Position numbers and translations under genes: made by a program
Sequence record: OR770614.1
Length of the DNA: 64,000 nucleotides
Reading direction: 5' to 3' (one strand)
In this document: positions 15,255-61,305 of the stretch, one piece after another
Numbering within the stretch: the first letter of the stretch is position 1
Layout: the number at the start of each line of letters is the position of its first letter
Notes under the pieces: generated by a model
What the model saw: the letters and a program-made list of their open reading frames with translations, nothing else
Database searches by the model: none
What the model was told of the DNA's origin: nothing

Positions 15255-15432
15255 ATCCGATTCACTCTCCTAGTGTAATTTTTATGAAATACTATTAGCT
15301 AATTAGTACTTCATTTTTATAATATATATTTAAAAATTGATATAAAACGGTAATATAAAATTCATGTAGTTTAAAATATTATGGTAACATATTATTATAA
15401 TAATACAAATAAAACTATCTAGAAAGAAGGTC

Positions 15433-16184: not shown

Positions 16185-18389
16185 TTATTCAAATATAAAA
16201 TTAGTTGAACCTGTGTCATATACTTTATTTATATAAGTTTTATTTCTATCAATCTTATTTCTTATATAGCTATCATTACTTGTACCTTTTAAGAAAGTCT
16301 TTTCAATAGGTAATTCATTACCTACTTTATACATTCCAAATTTTTCAAATTTATAACACGTATATGAATCAGATTTTACATTAAAAGTTAAACTTGGAAA
16401 TGTCTTTTTAATTTTAATTAAATCTGCGTCTGTATTTAAAAGTGAAATAAAATTATGTGATACATTAGTCTTATTATTAAAAGAAAATGCACAAATAATA
16501 TAACCTTTATAATAAAGAGCGAAGAAGTCAGAATCTTTCCCATAAAAGTCTTCTGTTGAGTGATTTTCAAAGAAATCTTTAAATGTAAAGAATCCCATAG
16601 ATTTAATTTTCACACCGCCATAGTCTAATACAGAATAATCATCTTTAAATAGTAACAATTGATGTAAGAATTTAGCATAATTCTTACCATCAATTCTTTT
16701 AGTTTCATTACGGATATCATCATCAAATAAATTAAGAAGATGGTATCCTTTTTCTTTAAGTTCATTGTATTTCTTAAGTTGATGATACTTAGCATTTATC
16801 TCAGATTTAGTTTCATTAGAATGATATTTAACTCCATTAACTTCAATAGCCAATTTATGTTCTTTACAGAGTATATCAATTTCTTTACCATCTAATAAAT
16901 CTCTATTCTGTCTTTCTATTTCAAAACCTAAATATTTCATTTCATCAGATACTTTTGATTCAGCAATAGATGATTTTCCATTACTACATGATGGACAATT
17001 AATACCTTTTTCTATTAAGTCATTTGCATTTATTTTAAATTCACCATGGTCTTTACATATTACTATTGATCTTTCATATTTATCGCTAGGTCTAAATTTA
17101 CTCATATTGTATTTATCTTTACCATGTTTAATATTTGCAAGTGTTTGATATACTTCAGTCTTTTCTTTTTCAGTATAATCAAAGTTATTAAGATTTTTAA
17201 TCTTAGTATTAAGTGACTTTATACGTTTATACTCTTTTAATTCTTGAACAGAATATTTTCTCTTATCCTTTATTTTTGGTATTGATTCTGGAATTATTTC
17301 TTTTTTATTTTCATTTGATTCTTTAATATTATCCTTAACTTTATCAATATTAAAATTATTAGAAATTTCTCTTTCTATACTTTCTTTCTTCATGTTCTTT
17401 TTAGCTTTTGGTGTTTTCTTTATACCCTTAAGTAATTTCTCAGTTTCTTCTTCACGTTTCTTTTTATTATTTTCTACAATCTTTTCCCAGTCTTTATCTA
17501 TACTAAGTTTTTCTTCTTCACACTTAGGGCAAGCTAATTTCTTATCAAATAACATTTCGTGTATAGATGTTTTAAATTCACCATGTTTTTCACATATAAT
17601 TGGTTGAACATCTTTTTCGTTAATAGGTCTAAATTTAGAAAAATCATAGTTTGTATTATTAGCTTTATTCAGAGCTAAATCATAAATATGACTTTTTTCA
17701 TCTTCTGTATAATCTTTAGTCAACTCTAAAAATAAATCAGGGTCTATGTCTTTTAAATTATTAAAGATATTTTCAGTAGTTGCAACTTCTCCATCTTTTT
17801 TACAACCTGGACAACCATCAAGATTATTCATAAGAAAATTTTTAACTGAACTTTTAAAGCTACCATGTTTTTCACAGATTATATTTTGTTTAGTATTTAT
17901 ACTGTTTGGTTTAAAATTAGATACATCATAAGGAGAATATAGTCCATATTTAGCTATCGTAACATTATAGAAGAATAAATATTTTTCTTCTTTACTTTTA
18001 TTTTTTAAATATCTAACTTTATCTTTCATTTTAGTAGAGCTATTTAAGAAAAATGTATAAGGTTCTAAATATTCATTAGGATCTTCTACCATAGGAGATT
18101 CAAGTCTCTTAGTTCTTTCTTTATTTTTTAAAAATTTCTCAGCGTTAGCTTTATTTTCATTTTCTCCTAATTCAATTATTCTTAAACAACTTTCAAAATA
18201 ATTATCAAACCATTCTTTACTTTTAACGTATTTAATCGTTCTTATTTTAAATTCTTCAGATATTTTTCCTTTATAAGTTACTTTTAATTTATCTTCATTT
18301 ATTTGATAATCTTTATCATTATCTATATTAAATGTATAGTCTTTACCTAATTTTTCTTTAAAGCTTTCTCTTAATTTTTTACCTAACAT
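16185..18389 (-). CDS. Free-standing homing-endonuclease-like protein: three CxxHG...CPxC Zn-ribbon repeats plus Vsr/Hef-like nuclease domain
   Basis: ICEKHG..GCPGC, ICEKHG..ACPKC, ICKDHG..NCPSC; EIDILCKEHKLAIEVNGVKYHS. Confidence 0.7.
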   Translation of the reverse strand: MLGKKLRESFKEKLGKDYTFNIDNDKDYQINEDKLKVTYKGKISEEFKIRTIKYVKSKEWFDNYFESCLRIIELGENENKANAEKFLKNKERTKRLESPMVEDPNEYLEPYTFFLNSSTKMKDKVRYLKNKSKEEKYLFFYNVTIAKYGLYSPYDVSNFKPNSINTKQNIICEKHGSFKSSVKNFLMNNLDGCPGCKKDGEVATTENIFNNLKDIDPDLFLELTKDYTEDEKSHIYDLALNKANNTNYDFSKFRPINEKDVQPIICEKHGEFKTSIHEMLFDKKLACPKCEEEKLSIDKDWEKIVENNKKKREEETEKLLKGIKKTPKAKKNMKKESIEREISNNFNIDKVKDNIKESNENKKEIIPESIPKIKDKRKYSVQELKEYKRIKSLNTKIKNLNNFDYTEKEKTEVYQTLANIKHGKDKYNMSKFRPSDKYERSIVICKDHGEFKINANDLIEKGINCPSCSNGKSSIAESKVSDEMKYLGFEIERQNRDLLDGKEIDILCKEHKLAIEVNGVKYHSNETKSEINAKYHQLKKYNELKEKGYHLLNLFDDDIRNETKRIDGKNYAKFLHQLLLFKDDYSVLDYGGVKIKSMGFFTFKDFFENHSTEDFYGKDSDFFALYYKGYIICAFSFNNKTNVSHNFISLLNTDADLIKIKKTFPSLTFNVKSDSYTCYKFEKFGMYKVGNELPIEKTFLKGTSNDSYIRNKIDRNKTYINKVYDTGSTNFIFE

Positions 18390-18478
18390 ATCATATTCAT
18401 CTCCATATTATAATATTAAGATTATATTTTAATAATCTCAAATTTATAATATATATTTAAAACGTAAAATAAAAATAA

Positions 18479-18508
18479 TCCCAATATCTATTAAATTAGA
18501 TATTGGGA
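18479..18508 (-). terminator. Palindrome family member ending the tRNA/ncRNA transcript
   Basis: TCCCAATATCT-ATTAAATT-AGATATTGGGA with compensatory A-T change, U-rich tail on the minus strand. Confidence 0.75.
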
Positions 18509-18509
18509 A

Positions 18510-19026
18510 ATATGTATAAAGATAACCCTAACCTCTTCGACTAATTTTGGAATCAATCTGTAGGTTAGGGTTATAGTTACTTTTACGAGAAAAGTATAAA
18601 GTTGCTTTAATAATTTTTTATATCCCATAAAGCATAAGAAGGATTAAAGAAACCAATATATGCATGGAACATATTAGGAATCTTGTAGCGATTTAATAGT
18701 CTAGTTTTTCTTATATTAGGGACTAAGAAACTAGAAAACCTAAAAAAGTATTAAAGTCAGATATTTATCACAAATTAATGTAAAATAAGTCCTCTTTAAT
18801 ACTTCGATCTAATAACTAAACGTAAATTAGATCTAAGACTGTAATGATTGTTGTGATACATATATTTAATTTGGCAGATTAAATATATGTGCTATTTTTT
18901 TTACAACTAAAGATATGCCTTAACTTTAGTTGAATCTAATAAATTAAGTTTGGCATATTACTTAATTTATATTTTATTCATAGCAGGTCTGCAGCCAAGC
19001 TATAAGGATGATTAATCCTATAGGGT
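18510..19026 (-). ncRNA. Candidate large structured RNA (hairpin array with complementary loops)
   Basis: No ORF; about ten stems, e.g. 18522-18574, 18701-18734, 18746-18804, 18806-18833, 18858-18890, 18904-18932, 18939-18970, 18981-19002; lies downstream of the tRNAs. Confidence 0.6.
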
Positions 19027-19129
19027 TGTTCCTAATGAGATTCGAACTCATAACCTACAGATCCATAAATTATCCTATCCAGGTATAATTCATAAAATCC
19101 GTACACTCTGACCATTGAGCTATAGGAAC
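19027..19129 (-). ncRNA. tRNA-like RNA with anticodon loop replaced by a long hairpin
   Basis: Acceptor GTTCCTA/TAGGAAC, D arm GCTC-AATGGTCA-GAGT, T arm ATGAG-TTCGAAT-CTCAT; 38 nt between TACGG and CTGTA instead of 7. Confidence 0.8.
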
Positions 19130-19136
19130 ATAGAAA

Positions 19137-19208
19137 CTGCTCTAGTTTGATTCGAACAAACAACCTCTTGATTAACAGTCAAGCATTCTACCATTGAATT
19201 ATAGAGCA
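19137..19208 (-). tRNA. tRNA-Asn (GTT)
   Basis: Cloverleaf TGCTCTA/TAGAGCA, anticodon arm CTTGA-CTGTTAA-TCAAG, T loop TTCGAAT, discriminator G; CCA not encoded. Confidence 0.92.
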
Positions 19209-19223
19209 TTAATAAAAAAAAAT

Positions 19224-19256
19224 AAAAGAGTACATTTATCATCTATGCACTCTTTT
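19224..19256 (-). terminator. Terminator-like hairpin immediately upstream of tRNA-Asn
   Basis: AAAAGAGTGCAT/ATGTACTCTTTT stem (G-U pair on the minus strand) followed by a U-tract. Confidence 0.55.
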
Positions 19257-19457
19257 AAGTAAATAAATATATAATAATATCTATTCATTTTTAATTATAC
19301 GTAAGGAGGCGTATGGATTTCTATTTAAAACCATGACATATTAAAAATAGAAACAAGAAATCAAAGGAACATTTTTAAAGCAACAACAAATGACAAAGTA
19401 AGTTATAATAGAATTTAATCTATTATATTTTTTAGTTAAATCAAAAACTAAAAAAAA

Positions 19458-19494
19458 AAATCTATAATAATTTGACGAGGATCATTATAGATTT
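19458..19494 (-). terminator. Intrinsic terminator downstream of tRNA-like RNA 19562-19631
   Basis: AATCTATAAT/ATTATAGATT stem followed by a long U-tract on the minus strand. Confidence 0.7.
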
Positions 19495-19561
19495 ATACTA
19501 TATAGTTAATTAATATTTTTAAATAAAATTTTTTAATAAATAGGAATTTTAGACCAAAAAA

Positions 19562-19631
19562 AGCTTATCCGAGGGATCGAACCCCGGACACATGATGAAA
19601 ATCATTGCTCTACCAACTGAGCTAGATAAAC
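19562..19631 (-). ncRNA. tRNA-like RNA with a 4-nt anticodon loop (Phe-like scaffold)
   Basis: GTTTATC/GATAAGC acceptor, GCTC-AGTTGGTA-GAGC D arm, CGGGG-TTCGATC-CCTCG T arm, anticodon arm ATGAT-TTTC-ATCAT; own early-type promoter 19644-19658. Confidence 0.75.
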
Positions 19632-19678
19632 TTTCTTCATTATTATAATATATGTTTATATTTCACTATATTACGCTT

Positions 19679-21055
19679 TTAATAAATATAATCTTCGATA
19701 TCAATTTCATTTTGTTTAATTGTCATATCATGGAAAGACTTCATGGAGCTTGTTACAATTGCTTGAGCTACCTGATTGACTAATAAACCAATATTTTCAA
19801 TACCTAATTTGTAAGGTAATTCTCCTGCACATTTACTACAAATATCTTCACTCGCACAATACATAGGACTTCTGAAGTTCAATACTTTCTCAATATACTC
19901 ATCTACATTTTCAGGAGTTAATAATATTAATTGACCTTTTCTTCCTGAAGTATTTTCAAAATATCTATAAAGTAAAAGACTTGCATTATCTTTAGTTAAA
20001 GTTAATTTTAATGTATGTTTTGTTCTACAATCAGAACCTTGTTTATCTAATACAGTTGTTTGGAAAGCGGACATAAGTTTTTTAGCTTGATCATTTTATT
20101 ATCTATATTTTACTATAGATTAGACTATATCTTATGAATTTAATCATTTCTATATTTAGTCGTTGGACAACTTTATTAAGTTGATGCTAGTTAGTTTTAA
20201 CATTCTAGCAATTAATAGAATTTATTGTGAGCATCTAATTTACCCACCTTCTTGAGTACCTAAAGCACGTCCAGCTGAACCAGCTGTCATAATATCACCA
20301 AACATATATAATTCTTCTGGATCAATTCCATCAGCTAAAGAACTCTTAGCAATACGTATTTTACTAGGATCAGCAAAATTTTTATTTGCTCCACGAATAA
20401 GAGCTGTTAATTTAAAGTTATTTTCAAAACTACCTCTTGATTTACTATCATAAATATCAAGATCTGCTAAACCTTCTAATTCTTCCTTACTTAACTTAAT
20501 TAATTCTTCTTCAATAGCACTAATAGCATTCAATTCTTCACCAGGAGTATTTAATGCTTTACCGTATTTCTCTAGTAATTCTTCTTTCTTTTGTTTAACT
20601 TTATCTGGAGCAACCATCATTGTAGTTGTTAAGCTAGAATTAATAAATCCTGCTATAGAGAAACCAAGCCATTGAAGTTTATCAATATACATATTCATAT
20701 CTTTAGTTGTAATAACGTCATTAAGTAATAAACTAGATAGTTCAGATTGTAGATTTCCTACACCTGATCCTCCCATATCTTTATTCATATATCCTATAAT
20801 AGGTCCTATTTTATTGTCTAATATAAATTTATTAAATATATATCTTCCAACTGTTGTTCTTTCATCTTTACTATTATAAACTAAATCTTTTTTAAGTTTA
20901 AATCTATCGCTAGGGTTAAACATTGGTTGTGTATTTTGTCTAAATGCAAATAATTCTTTAAGTTTATCAAGAGTAATATCTTCTTTTTTTATACTTAATA
21001 AAGTTGATATTTCTTTCTCAGATAAATCTTTTTTATCATAAGTCATATTAACCAA
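19679..21055 (-). CDS. rpoC: RNA polymerase beta' C-terminal subunit (probably virion RNAP), spliced; exons 21055-20242 and 20091-19679, 408 aa
   Basis: Splicing gives ALGTQEGGYQAKKLMSAF (bridge helix/switch); RSPMYC..ICSKC Zn site; SMKSFH trigger loop; late promoter 21089-21100. Confidence 0.88.
20092..20241 (-). mobile_element. Group I intron, 150 nt, no ORF
   Basis: P1 GTGGGT/GCTCAC with U-G splice pair; P AATTGCTAG, Q CTAGCATC, R TCCAACGACTA, S AAGATATAGTCT; terminal G. Confidence 0.9.
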
Positions 21056-42016: not shown

Positions 42017-42081
42017 AATAAAATCTCTCCTAATAAAATAATTTTTGTATTACTACTTTTATATAATATATATTTAAATTT

Positions 42082-47803: not shown

Positions 47804-47909
47804 ATCCTAATCTCTCCTTAAGTATAAATAAATCAAATATTGTTACATGTTTATAATATATAATTGAATAATGATTTGTAATAAACCATTATTCAATTAT
47901 TTTTATATC

Positions 47910-61280: not shown

Positions 61281-61305
61281 AACATTTTTATAATATATAT
61301 TTATT

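What the first reader, a model, noticed from the sequence alone, without database searches (positions are those of the whole stretch)
18510..19026. tRNA-linked hairpin-array RNA with complementary loops (kissing-loop or nanocage candidate)
Seen: an ORF-free ~510-nt stretch of about ten hairpins between the tRNA-like gene and a terminator. The loop of 18904-18932 contains ATATGCC (18913-18919), perfectly complementary to GGCATAT (18952-18958) in the next hairpin 18939-18970. The loop of 18858-18890 (TTGGCAG) is 6/7 complementary to CAGCCAA in 18981-19002, which also holds the palindrome CTGCAG. GC-rich complementary loops in ~80% AT sequence are unlikely by chance. The first two hairpins are only 6 nt apart, favouring intermolecular pairing. 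Known: GOLLD and ROOL RNAs lie near phage tRNAs and oligomerise; phi29 pRNA forms rings through loop-loop pairing. Inference: a new multimerising phage RNA, possibly released by tRNA 3' processing.
Basis: partly seen in the sequence, partly recalled or inferred. Interest (0 to 1): 0.82.

Follow-up and report, generated by a model that had tools for sequence, protein, structure and literature searches.

The report
New tRNA-headed hairpin RNA, Staphylococcus jumbo phages
This stretch is a previously unannotated, strongly structured non-coding RNA gene found only in one group of giant Staphylococcus phages, and two of its never-changing hairpin loops are perfectly complementary, which makes it a testable candidate for an RNA that pairs with copies of itself.

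Summary
The window is Staphylococcus jumbo phage vB_StaM_PB50. The RNA lies on the minus strand. A tRNA-like structure (19129-19027) is followed by an array of about 11-14 hairpins (fold z = -9.2) and ends at intrinsic terminators (18572-18466).

Ten related phages and one metagenome contig carry it, in single copy and unannotated. No Rfam family matches, including GOLLD, ROOL and pRNA.

In the 135-nt core, three stems (H1b, H2, H3) are kept by 15 compensatory pair changes, while the loops are invariant:
- GCUGCAGA, which contains a palindrome;
- AUAUGCC;
- GGCAUAU.

The last two are 7/7 complementary. They sit on regular helices joined by an invariant 6-nt linker. Chance gives about 0.03 for any loop pair and about 0.004 for adjacent loops.

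Because the loops never vary, their pairing has no covariation proof. The only change, A-U to G-U in SA1, is compatible with it.

Release of the RNA by RNase Z is uncertain.

Best reading: a new clade-specific tRNA-headed structured RNA that acts through loop-loop contacts. The function is unknown. No expression data were found.

The parts
19645..19657 (-). Promoter-like motif AAACATATATTAT-(6N)-G. It has one mismatch to the AR9-type early (virion RNA polymerase) consensus and lies just upstream of the first tRNA-like gene. It is present only in the PB50/Machias/AH12 group.
   Evidence: The consensus AAATATATATTAT-(6N)-G is from PMC5312081. Activity is not shown.
19561..19632 (-). First tRNA-like gene of the cluster. 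It is a cloverleaf with a shortened (about 6-nt) anticodon loop.
   Evidence: ARAGORN 'tRNA-??? (tt)'; Rfam tRNA 45.8 bits; sequence
19137..19208 (-). Canonical tRNA-Asn (GUU)
   Evidence: 72.1 bits
19027..19129 (-). tRNA-like structure (TLS) heading the RNA. The acceptor, D, anticodon and T stems are kept by compensatory changes. The anticodon loop is not kept: about 38 nt here, 5-7 nt in the S6/MarsHill group, 8 nt in SA1.
   Evidence: Rfam tRNA 52.5 bits; cloverleaf 98.8% paired, 8 pairs with changes on both sides; alignment A3
19005..19019 (-). H1: hairpin AGGAU-UAAUC-AUCCU. All 15 nt are invariant in 10 phages, stem included.
18980..19003 (-). H1b: 8-bp stem. The invariant 8-nt loop GCUGCAGA (18995-18988) contains the palindrome CUGCAG.
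   Evidence: 6 of 8 pairs show changes on both sides; loop 8/8 invariant
18939..18970 (-). H2: 11-bp stem, loop AAUAUGCCAA. The core AUAUGCC is at 18958-18952.
   Evidence: 5 of 11 pairs with changes on both sides; loop 7/10 invariant
18933..18938 (-). Invariant 6-nt linker UAGAUU between H2 and H3
   Evidence: 6/6 invariant; no indels anywhere in H2 or H3
18904..18932 (-). H3: 9-bp stem, loop UUAAGGCAUAU. The core GGCAUAU (18919-18913) is 7/7 complementary to the H2 loop.
   Evidence: 4 of 9 pairs with changes on both sides; loop 9/11 invariant; proposed kissing helix has 6 invariant pairs plus one A-U to G-U change; duplex about -9.5 kcal/mol
18858..18890 (-). H4: optional 13-bp hairpin with loop CUGCCAA. 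It is present only in PB50, Machias and SA1.
18806..18833 (-). H5: optional hairpin with the conserved loop UUACGUUUAGUU. It is absent in AH12 and Madawaska.
18748..18802 (-). H6: long hairpin with the conserved internal loop (AGG / AUCUGA). It is absent in Madawaska and degenerate in LY01.
   Evidence: a few compensatory pairs
18700..18738 (-). H7: hairpin with an invariant stem (UCUAGUUU / AAACUAGA) and a variable C-rich loop. It is present in all 10 phages.
   Evidence: 8 invariant pairs, no covariation
18575..18699 (-). Clade-specific 3' region of further hairpins. The S6/MarsHill/SA1 group carries a different sequence here.
18524..18572 (-). T1: long hairpin AACCCUAACCU...AGGUUAGGGUU followed by a U-rich tail. 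It is the counterpart of the single terminator in the other phages.
18466..18508 (-). T2: intrinsic terminator, a 12-bp stem followed by UUAUUUUUAUUUU. It marks the 3' end of the RNA unit.
   Evidence: (terminator scan)
18440..18461 (-). Boundary feature, not part of the RNA. It is a perfect AR9-type early promoter, AAATATATATTAT-AAAUUU-G(+1), for the downstream homing-endonuclease-like ORF.
   Evidence: consensus from PMC5312081 and 10.1101/2020.12.14.422802

Best explanation
The stretch is the body of a previously unannotated structured non-coding RNA gene on the minus strand. It is specific to the PB50/MarsHill/S6 clade of Staphylococcus jumbo phages.

Anatomy: the RNA starts with, or directly after, a tRNA-like structure. 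That structure keeps the cloverleaf but not a decoding anticodon loop. The RNA ends at intrinsic terminators. Its universal core is the tRNA-like head plus four hairpins (H1, H1b, H2, H3).

Shown: the stems are kept by compensatory changes, while the loops and the H2-H3 linker are invariant.

Inferred mechanism:
- The tRNA-like head recruits host RNase P, and possibly RNase Z, to give a defined stable RNA.
- The invariant loops are RNA-RNA contact surfaces. AUAUGCC of H2 pairs with GGCAUAU of H3.
- The palindromic CUGCAG loop of H1b offers a second self-contact that could extend assembly.

The cellular role (scaffold, decoy or container) is unknown.

My probabilities: real structured RNA gene about 0.9; the H2-H3 loop pairing is functional about 0.55; that pairing is intermolecular about 0.3.
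For: - Identity and spread: the window is 100% identical to phage PB50. The locus is present once each in 10 Staphylococcus jumbo phages and is unannotated in all of them. One metagenome contig also carries it.
- Fold: z = -9.19 on the minus strand against -5.68 on the plus strand.
- Covariation in the core: 96.9% of cells paired, 15 pairs changed on both sides, and 0 of 500 shuffles reach this. Slid controls give 26-39% paired. RNAalifold finds the same helices on its own.
- Strand: 10 G-U cells against 1 A-C cell in the core, plus the tRNA orientation and the U-tails.
- Selection pattern: loops and linker are invariant (H1b 8/8, H2 7/10, H3 9/11, linker 6/6). Stems are much less so (4/16, 8/22, 10/18). 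There are no indels in H2 or H3.
- Loop complementarity: 7/7, about -9.5 kcal/mol; chance about 0.03 for any pair and about 0.004 for adjacent loops. The only substitution in the proposed helix keeps pairing (A-U to G-U).
- tRNA-like head: the cloverleaf covaries while the anticodon loop length varies.
- Conservation level: core nucleotide identity (76-85%) equals that of the neighbouring RNA polymerase gene (79-81%). The adjacent ORF is only 33-37% identical in protein.
Against: - The loops never vary, so there is no covariation proof that they pair with each other. Invariance fits protein binding or pairing with a third RNA equally well.
- There are only about five independent lineages, all in one phage clade.
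- No expression data were found. A promoter is recognisable only in the PB50 group, and with one mismatch. In every phage a terminator-like hairpin sits just upstream of the tRNA-Asn/tRNA-like genes.
- An intramolecular kiss cannot be excluded, because the H3 loop has a 4-nt flexible flank.
- H1 is invariant in stem and loop, which hints at sequence-specific recognition rather than structure alone.
Confidence: 0.55

Rival explanations
1. It is a monomeric structured RNA. The H2 and H3 loops kiss within one molecule, or make other tertiary contacts, and build a compact fold that binds a phage or host protein or ligand. There is no self-assembly.
For: The same conservation pattern applies. H2 and H3 are adjacent and of similar length (11 and 9 bp). 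The H3 loop has a 4-nt unpaired 5' flank that could act as a hinge. Many natural RNAs use intramolecular loop-loop contacts between neighbouring hairpins, for example purine and lysine riboswitches and the SRP Alu domain (my own knowledge).
Against: A 7-bp kissing helix stacks roughly coaxially between its stems. That gives 27 bp, about 76 A. The 6-nt linker spans at most about 45 A. Neither stem has a conserved bend motif (alignment). This is reasoning from standard A-form geometry, not a test.
Confidence: 0.22
2. The invariant loops are binding sites for something else, such as proteins, host or phage mRNAs, or rRNA. The RNA would then be a multi-site regulator or sponge, and the complementarity between the two loops would be incidental.
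For: Invariance without covariation is what trans-target or protein recognition predicts. H1 is invariant even in its stem. The H7 loop carries a C-rich motif (CCCUAA/UCCUA) of the kind S. aureus regulatory RNAs use against ribosome-binding sites (my own knowledge). The single-sequence chance of complementarity is not negligible at about 3% for any loop pair.
Against: Adjacent-loop 7/7 complementarity has a chance of about 0.4%. Both partners, the linker and both stem lengths are fixed together. The loop sequences are not enriched elsewhere in the 64-kb window. The host genome could not be searched.
Confidence: 0.18
3. The conservation acts on DNA rather than RNA. The stretch would be a homing-endonuclease target or insertion hot-spot, a replication or packaging signal, or decaying tRNA-cluster debris.
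For: Hef-like homing endonuclease genes flank the locus: one downstream in all phages and a second upstream in S6, PALS_2, DC4 and LY01. AR9 has such a gene at the same place. A published account calls the tRNA genes of these phages degenerating (10.1101/2020.12.14.422802).
Against: Compensatory changes keep four tRNA stems and three hairpin stems. G-U pairs exist only on the minus strand. The strands differ in fold z-score. A terminator follows the array. Debris would not keep 15 plus 8 covarying pairs.
Confidence: 0.04
4. It is a divergent member of GOLLD, ROOL or phi29 pRNA.
For: It shares the context of GOLLD and ROOL: a phage, next to tRNA genes. Those RNAs are reported near tRNA islands and use quaternary kissing loops (10.1101/2024.12.08.627333). 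Like pRNA, it has two mutually complementary loops.
Against: No match to any of the 4227 Rfam models other than tRNA, even at E up to 10 on the 1.4-kb region. The architecture is a linear array of local hairpins, not a multi-domain pseudoknotted fold.
Confidence: 0.01

Closest known systems
GOLLD and ROOL RNAs (Rfam; cryo-EM nanocages, 10.1101/2024.12.08.627333)
   Same: They are large structured RNAs encoded by phages or prophages, often beside tRNA genes, and their function is unknown. They are held together by conserved loop-loop (kissing) contacts between molecules.
   Different: There is no sequence or structure homology. This RNA is a string of simple hairpins with a 135-nt conserved core, not a 580-800-nt multi-pseudoknot fold. 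It is limited to one Staphylococcus phage clade. Assembly is not shown.
phi29 pRNA (packaging RNA)
   Same: Here the H2 and H3 loops are 7/7 complementary on adjacent helices.
   Different: There is no Rfam match. pRNA loops pair through 4 nt and the RNA docks on the portal of small podoviruses. This phage is a jumbo myovirus, and no link to packaging is known.
HIV-1 dimerisation initiation site (DIS)
   Same: A hairpin loop holds a 6-nt palindrome flanked by purines. Here it is G-CUGCAG-A in H1b, invariant in all 10 phages.
   Different: The system is unrelated. Self-pairing of H1b is untested, and a 6-nt palindrome in a loop is not rare by chance.
Stable RNAs C and D (rnaC, rnaD) of the phage T4 tRNA gene cluster
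   Same: They are phage-encoded stable RNAs of unknown function, co-located and co-oriented with phage tRNA genes and cut out by host tRNA-processing enzymes. The T4 cluster also harbours a free-standing homing endonuclease gene, segB (my own knowledge).
   Different: The T4 RNAs are much shorter (about 120-140 nt). No homology to them was tested here, and no complementary-loop module is known in them.
tRNA-like-headed transcripts: MHV68 TMERs (tRNA-like plus hairpins), MALAT1-mascRNA
   Same: A non-decoding tRNA-like fold is fused to another structured RNA, so that RNase P or RNase Z defines the ends (my own knowledge).
   Different: Those are eukaryotic or herpesviral. Here processing is only inferred, and CC after the discriminator in two lineages may block RNase Z.

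Membership tests
GOLLD RNA (Rfam) | Match to the family covariance model (conserved 3' domain) | tested here: not met
   cmscan of the window at gathering scores and of 18300-19700 at E up to 10 lists no GOLLD hit
ROOL RNA (Rfam) | Match to the family covariance model | tested here: not met
   No ROOL hit at E up to 10
GOLLD/ROOL kind | Phage-encoded, adjacent to tRNA genes | tested here: met
   Phage PB50; directly 3' of tRNA-Asn and a tRNA-like gene
GOLLD/ROOL kind | RNA-only homo-oligomer held by intermolecular kissing loops | not testable with these tools
   Only the sequence potential is seen: 7/7 complementary invariant loops and a palindromic loop
phi29 pRNA | Match to the family covariance model | tested here: not met
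   No hit at E up to 10
phi29 pRNA | Two mutually complementary loops in one molecule | tested here: met
   AUAUGCC (18958-18952) and GGCAUAU (18919-18913), invariant in 10 phages
tRNA (for 19129-19027) | Cloverleaf with acceptor, D, anticodon and T stems | tested here: met
   Rfam tRNA 52.5 bits against a gathering score of 29; 98.8% of cells paired and 8 pairs covarying
tRNA (for 19129-19027) | 7-nt anticodon loop with U33 and a conserved anticodon | tested here: not met
   The loop is about 38 nt in PB50/Machias, shorter in AH12, 5-7 nt with G33 or A33 in the S6/MarsHill/LY01 group, and 8 nt in SA1. ARAGORN does not call it in PB50.
tmRNA | tRNA-like domain plus tag reading frame, detected by ARAGORN or Rfam | tested here: not met
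   ARAGORN finds no tmRNA; no Rfam tmRNA hit in the stretch
Group I / group II intron | Match to the intron covariance models | tested here: not met
   None in 18300-19700. The same search does find a group I intron at 20103-20287 and a group II intron in LPJP1, so the method works in this context.
RNA-guided nuclease guide RNA (HEARO/omega-RNA type) for the downstream ORF | RNA co-transcribed with, and co-evolving with, an IscB/TnpB-type nuclease | tested here: not met
   The ORF is a Hef-like/EDxHD homing endonuclease with its own early promoter behind two terminators. It is 33-37% identical between clades while the RNA core is about 80%. AR9 has such an ORF at the same site without the RNA.

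The most novel reading that the evidence does not exclude
A compact natural self-assembling RNA. Through the palindromic H1b loop it could form larger rings or cages in infected Staphylococcus cells. That would be a third, unrelated, tRNA-linked phage RNA of the GOLLD/ROOL kind, with a minimal assembly module of only about 135 nt.
Probability: 0.27. Interest if true: 0.82.

Novelty: new variant of a known kind. Interest (0 to 1): 0.62.

Why it matters
Natural RNA-only assemblies are few, and their biology is unknown. This RNA offers a small, cleanly delimited module: two regular hairpins, a fixed 6-nt linker, 7-nt complementary loops and a palindromic loop. A native gel and a handful of loop mutants can test it directly. 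It comes from phages that grow on laboratory S. aureus strains, so a knockout phenotype can be sought.

It also corrects the published reading that the tRNA genes of these phages are merely decaying. The tRNA-like fold is under selection for shape, not for decoding.

Even if the RNA turns out to be monomeric, it is a new conserved RNA family. It is about as conserved as the neighbouring virion RNA polymerase gene, in a group of phages that is being considered for therapy.

Tried and rejected
- Wider homologues, to test loop covariation. I ran exact and gapped motif scans of IMG/VR, of JGI metagenomes and of GTDB genomes. After filtering, all hits were chance matches in coding regions, except one MarsHill-like contig, L082. 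A protein-anchored scan of IMG/VR found no relatives.
- Synteny. AR9 and BpSp have no room for the RNA after the RNA polymerase gene. LPJP1 has an ORF-less group II intron there instead. A relative 67% identical in that gene (L220) has ordinary ORFs there.
- Covariance model. A model of the core (R1) finds only the known copies: 158 bits in the window and 98 bits in L082.
- Short-query blastn at E up to 10 finds only the 10 phages.
- Coding potential. Short ORFs exist, but the compensatory stem changes alter their products and lengths. Rejected.
- RNA guide for the neighbouring nuclease. Rejected (see membership test).
Not conserved. A shorter 5-nt register, UCUG(C/U) with GCAGA, is shared by the three phages that have H4 but is too short to weigh.
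- Alternative long helix. AUAUGCC pairing with GGCAUAU as a stem, extended by CUUAA/UUAAG, is not kept in SA1.
- An 8-nt pairing between the tRNA-like 5' strand and the sequence before H1. It exists only in the PB50 group.
- Promoter search. No AR9-type early or late motif was found upstream of the RNA in most phages.

Full report
**Source and orientation.** The window is 100% identical to Staphylococcus phage vB_StaM_PB50, a 274-kb jumbo phage. It is 22-32% G+C. The three tRNA-type genes near the finding are all on the minus strand: 19632-19561, 19208-19137 (tRNA-Asn GUU) and 19129-19027. The flanking genes are on the minus strand as well. The terminator is a 12-bp stem plus U-tail at 18508-18479. 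The tRNA-like gene is therefore the 5' neighbour and the terminator is the 3' end.

The 562-nt minus-strand RNA (19026-18465) folds into a chain of local hairpins at -140.3 kcal/mol, z = -9.19 against dinucleotide shuffles. The plus strand gives z = -5.68.
- H3 lies at 18932-18904.
- H2 lies at 18970-18939.
- H1b lies at 19003-18980.
- H4 lies at 18890-18858.

The H2 loop core AUAUGCC (18958-18952) and the H3 loop core GGCAUAU (18919-18913) are 7/7 complementary, with a duplex energy of about -9.5 kcal/mol. The two hairpins are separated by 6 nt. With the loops of this RNA, shuffling gives a 7-nt match between any two loops in about 3% of trials. It gives one between adjacent loops in 0.3-0.5%. 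Only short ORFs (45 aa or less) overlap the stretch.

**Relatives.** blastn finds the locus once each in ten Staphylococcus jumbo phages: PB50, Machias, AH12, PALS_2, S6, DC4, MarsHill, Madawaska, SA1 and LY01. No record annotates it. A metagenome contig (L082) holds a truncated MarsHill-like copy. Nothing else was found:
- Motif scans of IMG/VR, JGI metagenomes and GTDB genomes gave only chance hits.
- IMG/VR holds no close relative of the neighbouring polymerase gene.
- The syntenic sites in AR9, BpSp, LPJP1 and an uncultured relative 67% identical in that gene lack the RNA.
- A covariance model of the core scores 158 bits on the window and finds no second copy.

No Rfam family other than tRNA matches, even at E up to 10. 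That rules out GOLLD, ROOL, pRNA, tmRNA and introns by homology.

**Anatomy from the alignment.** The universal core follows the tRNA-like head:
- H1 is AGGAU-UAAUC-AUCCU. All 15 nt are invariant.
- H1b has an 8-bp stem and the loop GCUGCAGA.
- An A-rich joint follows.
- H2 has an 11-bp stem and a loop holding UAUGCCA.
- The linker UAGAUU follows.
- H3 has a 9-bp stem and a loop holding AAGGCAUAU.
- The core ends with UAAAA.

Counting pairs on nine distinct sequences gives 96.9% of cells paired and 15 pairs with changes on both sides (6 in H1b, 5 in H2, 4 in H3). None of 500 shuffles reaches this. Sliding the partners drops pairing to 26-39%. RNAalifold finds the same helices on its own.

G-U pairs number 10 cells against one A-C cell, so the folded strand is the minus strand.

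The selection pattern is the telling part:

| Element | Invariant positions |
|---|---|
| H1b loop | 8/8 |
| H2 loop | 7/10 |
| H3 loop | 9/11 |
| H2-H3 linker | 6/6 |
| H1b stem | 4/16 |
| H2 stem | 8/22 |
| H3 stem | 10/18 |

There is not one indel in H2 or H3. The core is 76-85% identical in nucleotides between clades. That matches the adjacent virion RNA polymerase gene at 79-81%.

Downstream modules are less constant. H4 exists only in PB50, Machias and SA1. H5 and H6 are missing in some phages. H7 is universal, with an invariant stem and a variable C-rich loop. The 3' region comes in two unrelated versions. All versions end in a terminator.

**The tRNA-like head.** All four cloverleaf stems are kept: 98.8% of cells are paired, 8 pairs changed on both sides, and 0 of 500 shuffles reach this. 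The anticodon loop is not kept. It is about 38 nt in PB50 and Machias and shorter in AH12. In the S6/MarsHill/LY01 group it is 5-7 nt with G or A at position 33 and different 'anticodons'. In SA1 it is 8 nt. It is therefore selected for tRNA shape, not for decoding. This revises the published view that the tRNA genes of these phages are simply decaying (10.1101/2020.12.14.422802).

No CCA is encoded. The three bases after the discriminator are ACC, CGC, CCC, CCG or AAC. From my own knowledge, Bacillus RNase Z is inhibited by C at positions 74-75. Release of the downstream RNA is thus plausible in some lineages and doubtful in Madawaska and SA1. The head may stay attached, with RNase P defining the 5' end. 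This is inference.

**Transcription is not shown.** The downstream ORF has a perfect AR9-type early promoter, AAATATATATTAT-6N-G, at 18461-18440. The motif recurs before other genes in the window (consensus from PMC5312081). The RNA unit has such a motif only in the PB50 group. It carries one mismatch and sits before the first tRNA-like gene. In every phage a terminator-like hairpin sits just upstream of the tRNA-Asn/tRNA-like genes. The promoter therefore remains unidentified. I found no transcriptome for these phages in the library searches made here; no query targeted phage transcriptomes directly.

**Does the loop pairing exist, and is it between molecules?** The seven proposed pairs are invariant in six positions and change once, from A-U to G-U in SA1. 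That is compatible with pairing, but it is not covariation.

For geometry I use standard A-form values, which is reasoning and not a test:
- A 7-bp kissing helix stacks between its two stems. H2, the kiss and H3 together make about 27 bp, or roughly 76 A.
- The 6-nt linker spans at most about 45 A.
- Neither stem has a conserved bend motif.
- An intramolecular kiss therefore needs a sharp bend.
Each linker would then bridge only about 20-25 A.

The fixed stem lengths and the fixed linker fit a precise three-dimensional arrangement. The invariant palindrome CUGCAG in an 8-nt loop offers a second, self-complementary contact (about -10 kcal/mol). I rate it as a hypothesis: loop pairing functional about 0.55, intermolecular about 0.3.

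**Neighbourhood.** The downstream 734-aa ORF (18389-16185) matches homing-endonuclease families. The hits are PHROG 3339, DUF559 and treble-clef fingers, and weakly the PDB entry 3r3p, 'mobile intron protein'. It is only 33-37% identical between clades. It has a paralogue upstream of the RNA in S6, PALS_2, DC4 and LY01, and a Hef-like counterpart at the same site in AR9, which has no RNA there. It is best read as a free-standing homing endonuclease lodged next to a conserved RNA gene. This resembles segB in the T4 tRNA cluster (my own knowledge). It is not a partner of the RNA.

**Comparison with known systems.**
- In kind it resembles GOLLD and ROOL, which are phage RNAs beside tRNA genes that assemble through kissing loops (10.1101/2024.12.08.627333).
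- In its complementary loops it resembles phi29 pRNA.
- In its genomic setting it resembles the T4 stable RNAs C and D.
- In having a tRNA-like head it resembles MHV68 TMERs.

It is a member of none of these. The homology tests that could be run, against the Rfam families, were not met. No comparison with T4 RNAs C and D or MHV68 TMERs was run. I file it as a new family and a new variant of the kind 'tRNA-linked structured phage RNA'.

**Verdict.**
- It is a real and new RNA family of narrow distribution, with a clear and cheap experimental test for self-assembly.
- Interest is 0.62. The narrow phylogenetic range, the lack of expression data and the absence of loop covariation hold the score down.

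Noticed in passing
window 16185-18389 (-): A 734-aa ORF just downstream of the RNA is a Hef-like/EDxHD homing-endonuclease relative (PHROG 3339, DUF559, treble-clef fingers). It has its own perfect early promoter. It is only 33-37% identical between phage clades, has a paralogue upstream of the RNA in S6, PALS_2, DC4 and LY01, and a counterpart at the same site in AR9.
   Followed up: partly
window 20103-20287 (-): The virion RNA polymerase beta-prime mid-domain gene is split into two ORFs (21055-20240 and 20074-19679). The roughly 185-nt intervening sequence gives a sub-threshold group I intron match (34.6 bits against a gathering score of 50, E = 2e-7). It would be an unusually small group I intron, and the default Rfam scan misses it.
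   Followed up: partly
window 19561-19632 (-): The first 'tRNA' of the cluster also has an abnormal anticodon loop (about 6 nt, UUUUCA; ARAGORN reports 'tRNA-??? (tt)'). PB50 therefore carries two shape-only tRNA-like genes and one normal tRNA-Asn.
   Followed up: no
window 19209-19560 (-), including 19303-19336 (+): The 350-nt spacer between the first tRNA-like gene and tRNA-Asn (PB50 group only) holds several hairpins and two terminator-like elements. On the plus strand it has a strong ribosome-binding site (AAGGAGG) followed by a 7-codon mini-ORF (MDFYLKP).
   Followed up: no
window 15316-15334, 18443-18461, 42060-42078, 47850-47868, 61287-61305 (all -): The AR9-type early promoter motif TTTAAATATATATTATAAA recurs upstream of minus-strand genes. 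There are 13 matches with up to 3 mismatches, against about 4 expected by chance.
   Followed up: partly
window 18714-18723 and 18524-18535 (-): The H7 loop (GUCCCUAAUA) repeats the 5' strand of terminator hairpin T1 (AACCCUAACCU). It could therefore compete for the terminator's 3' strand (UUAGGG). The match is 8 nt in the S6/MarsHill group and absent in Madawaska and SA1. It may be a lineage-specific alternative pairing or a coincidence.
   Followed up: no
L217:7227-7822 (Listeria phage LPJP1, MZ422438): The 866-nt gap after the homologous RNA polymerase gene holds an ORF-less group II intron (domains 1-4 at 43 bits, domains 5-6 at 66 bits). The record does not annotate it.
   Followed up: partly
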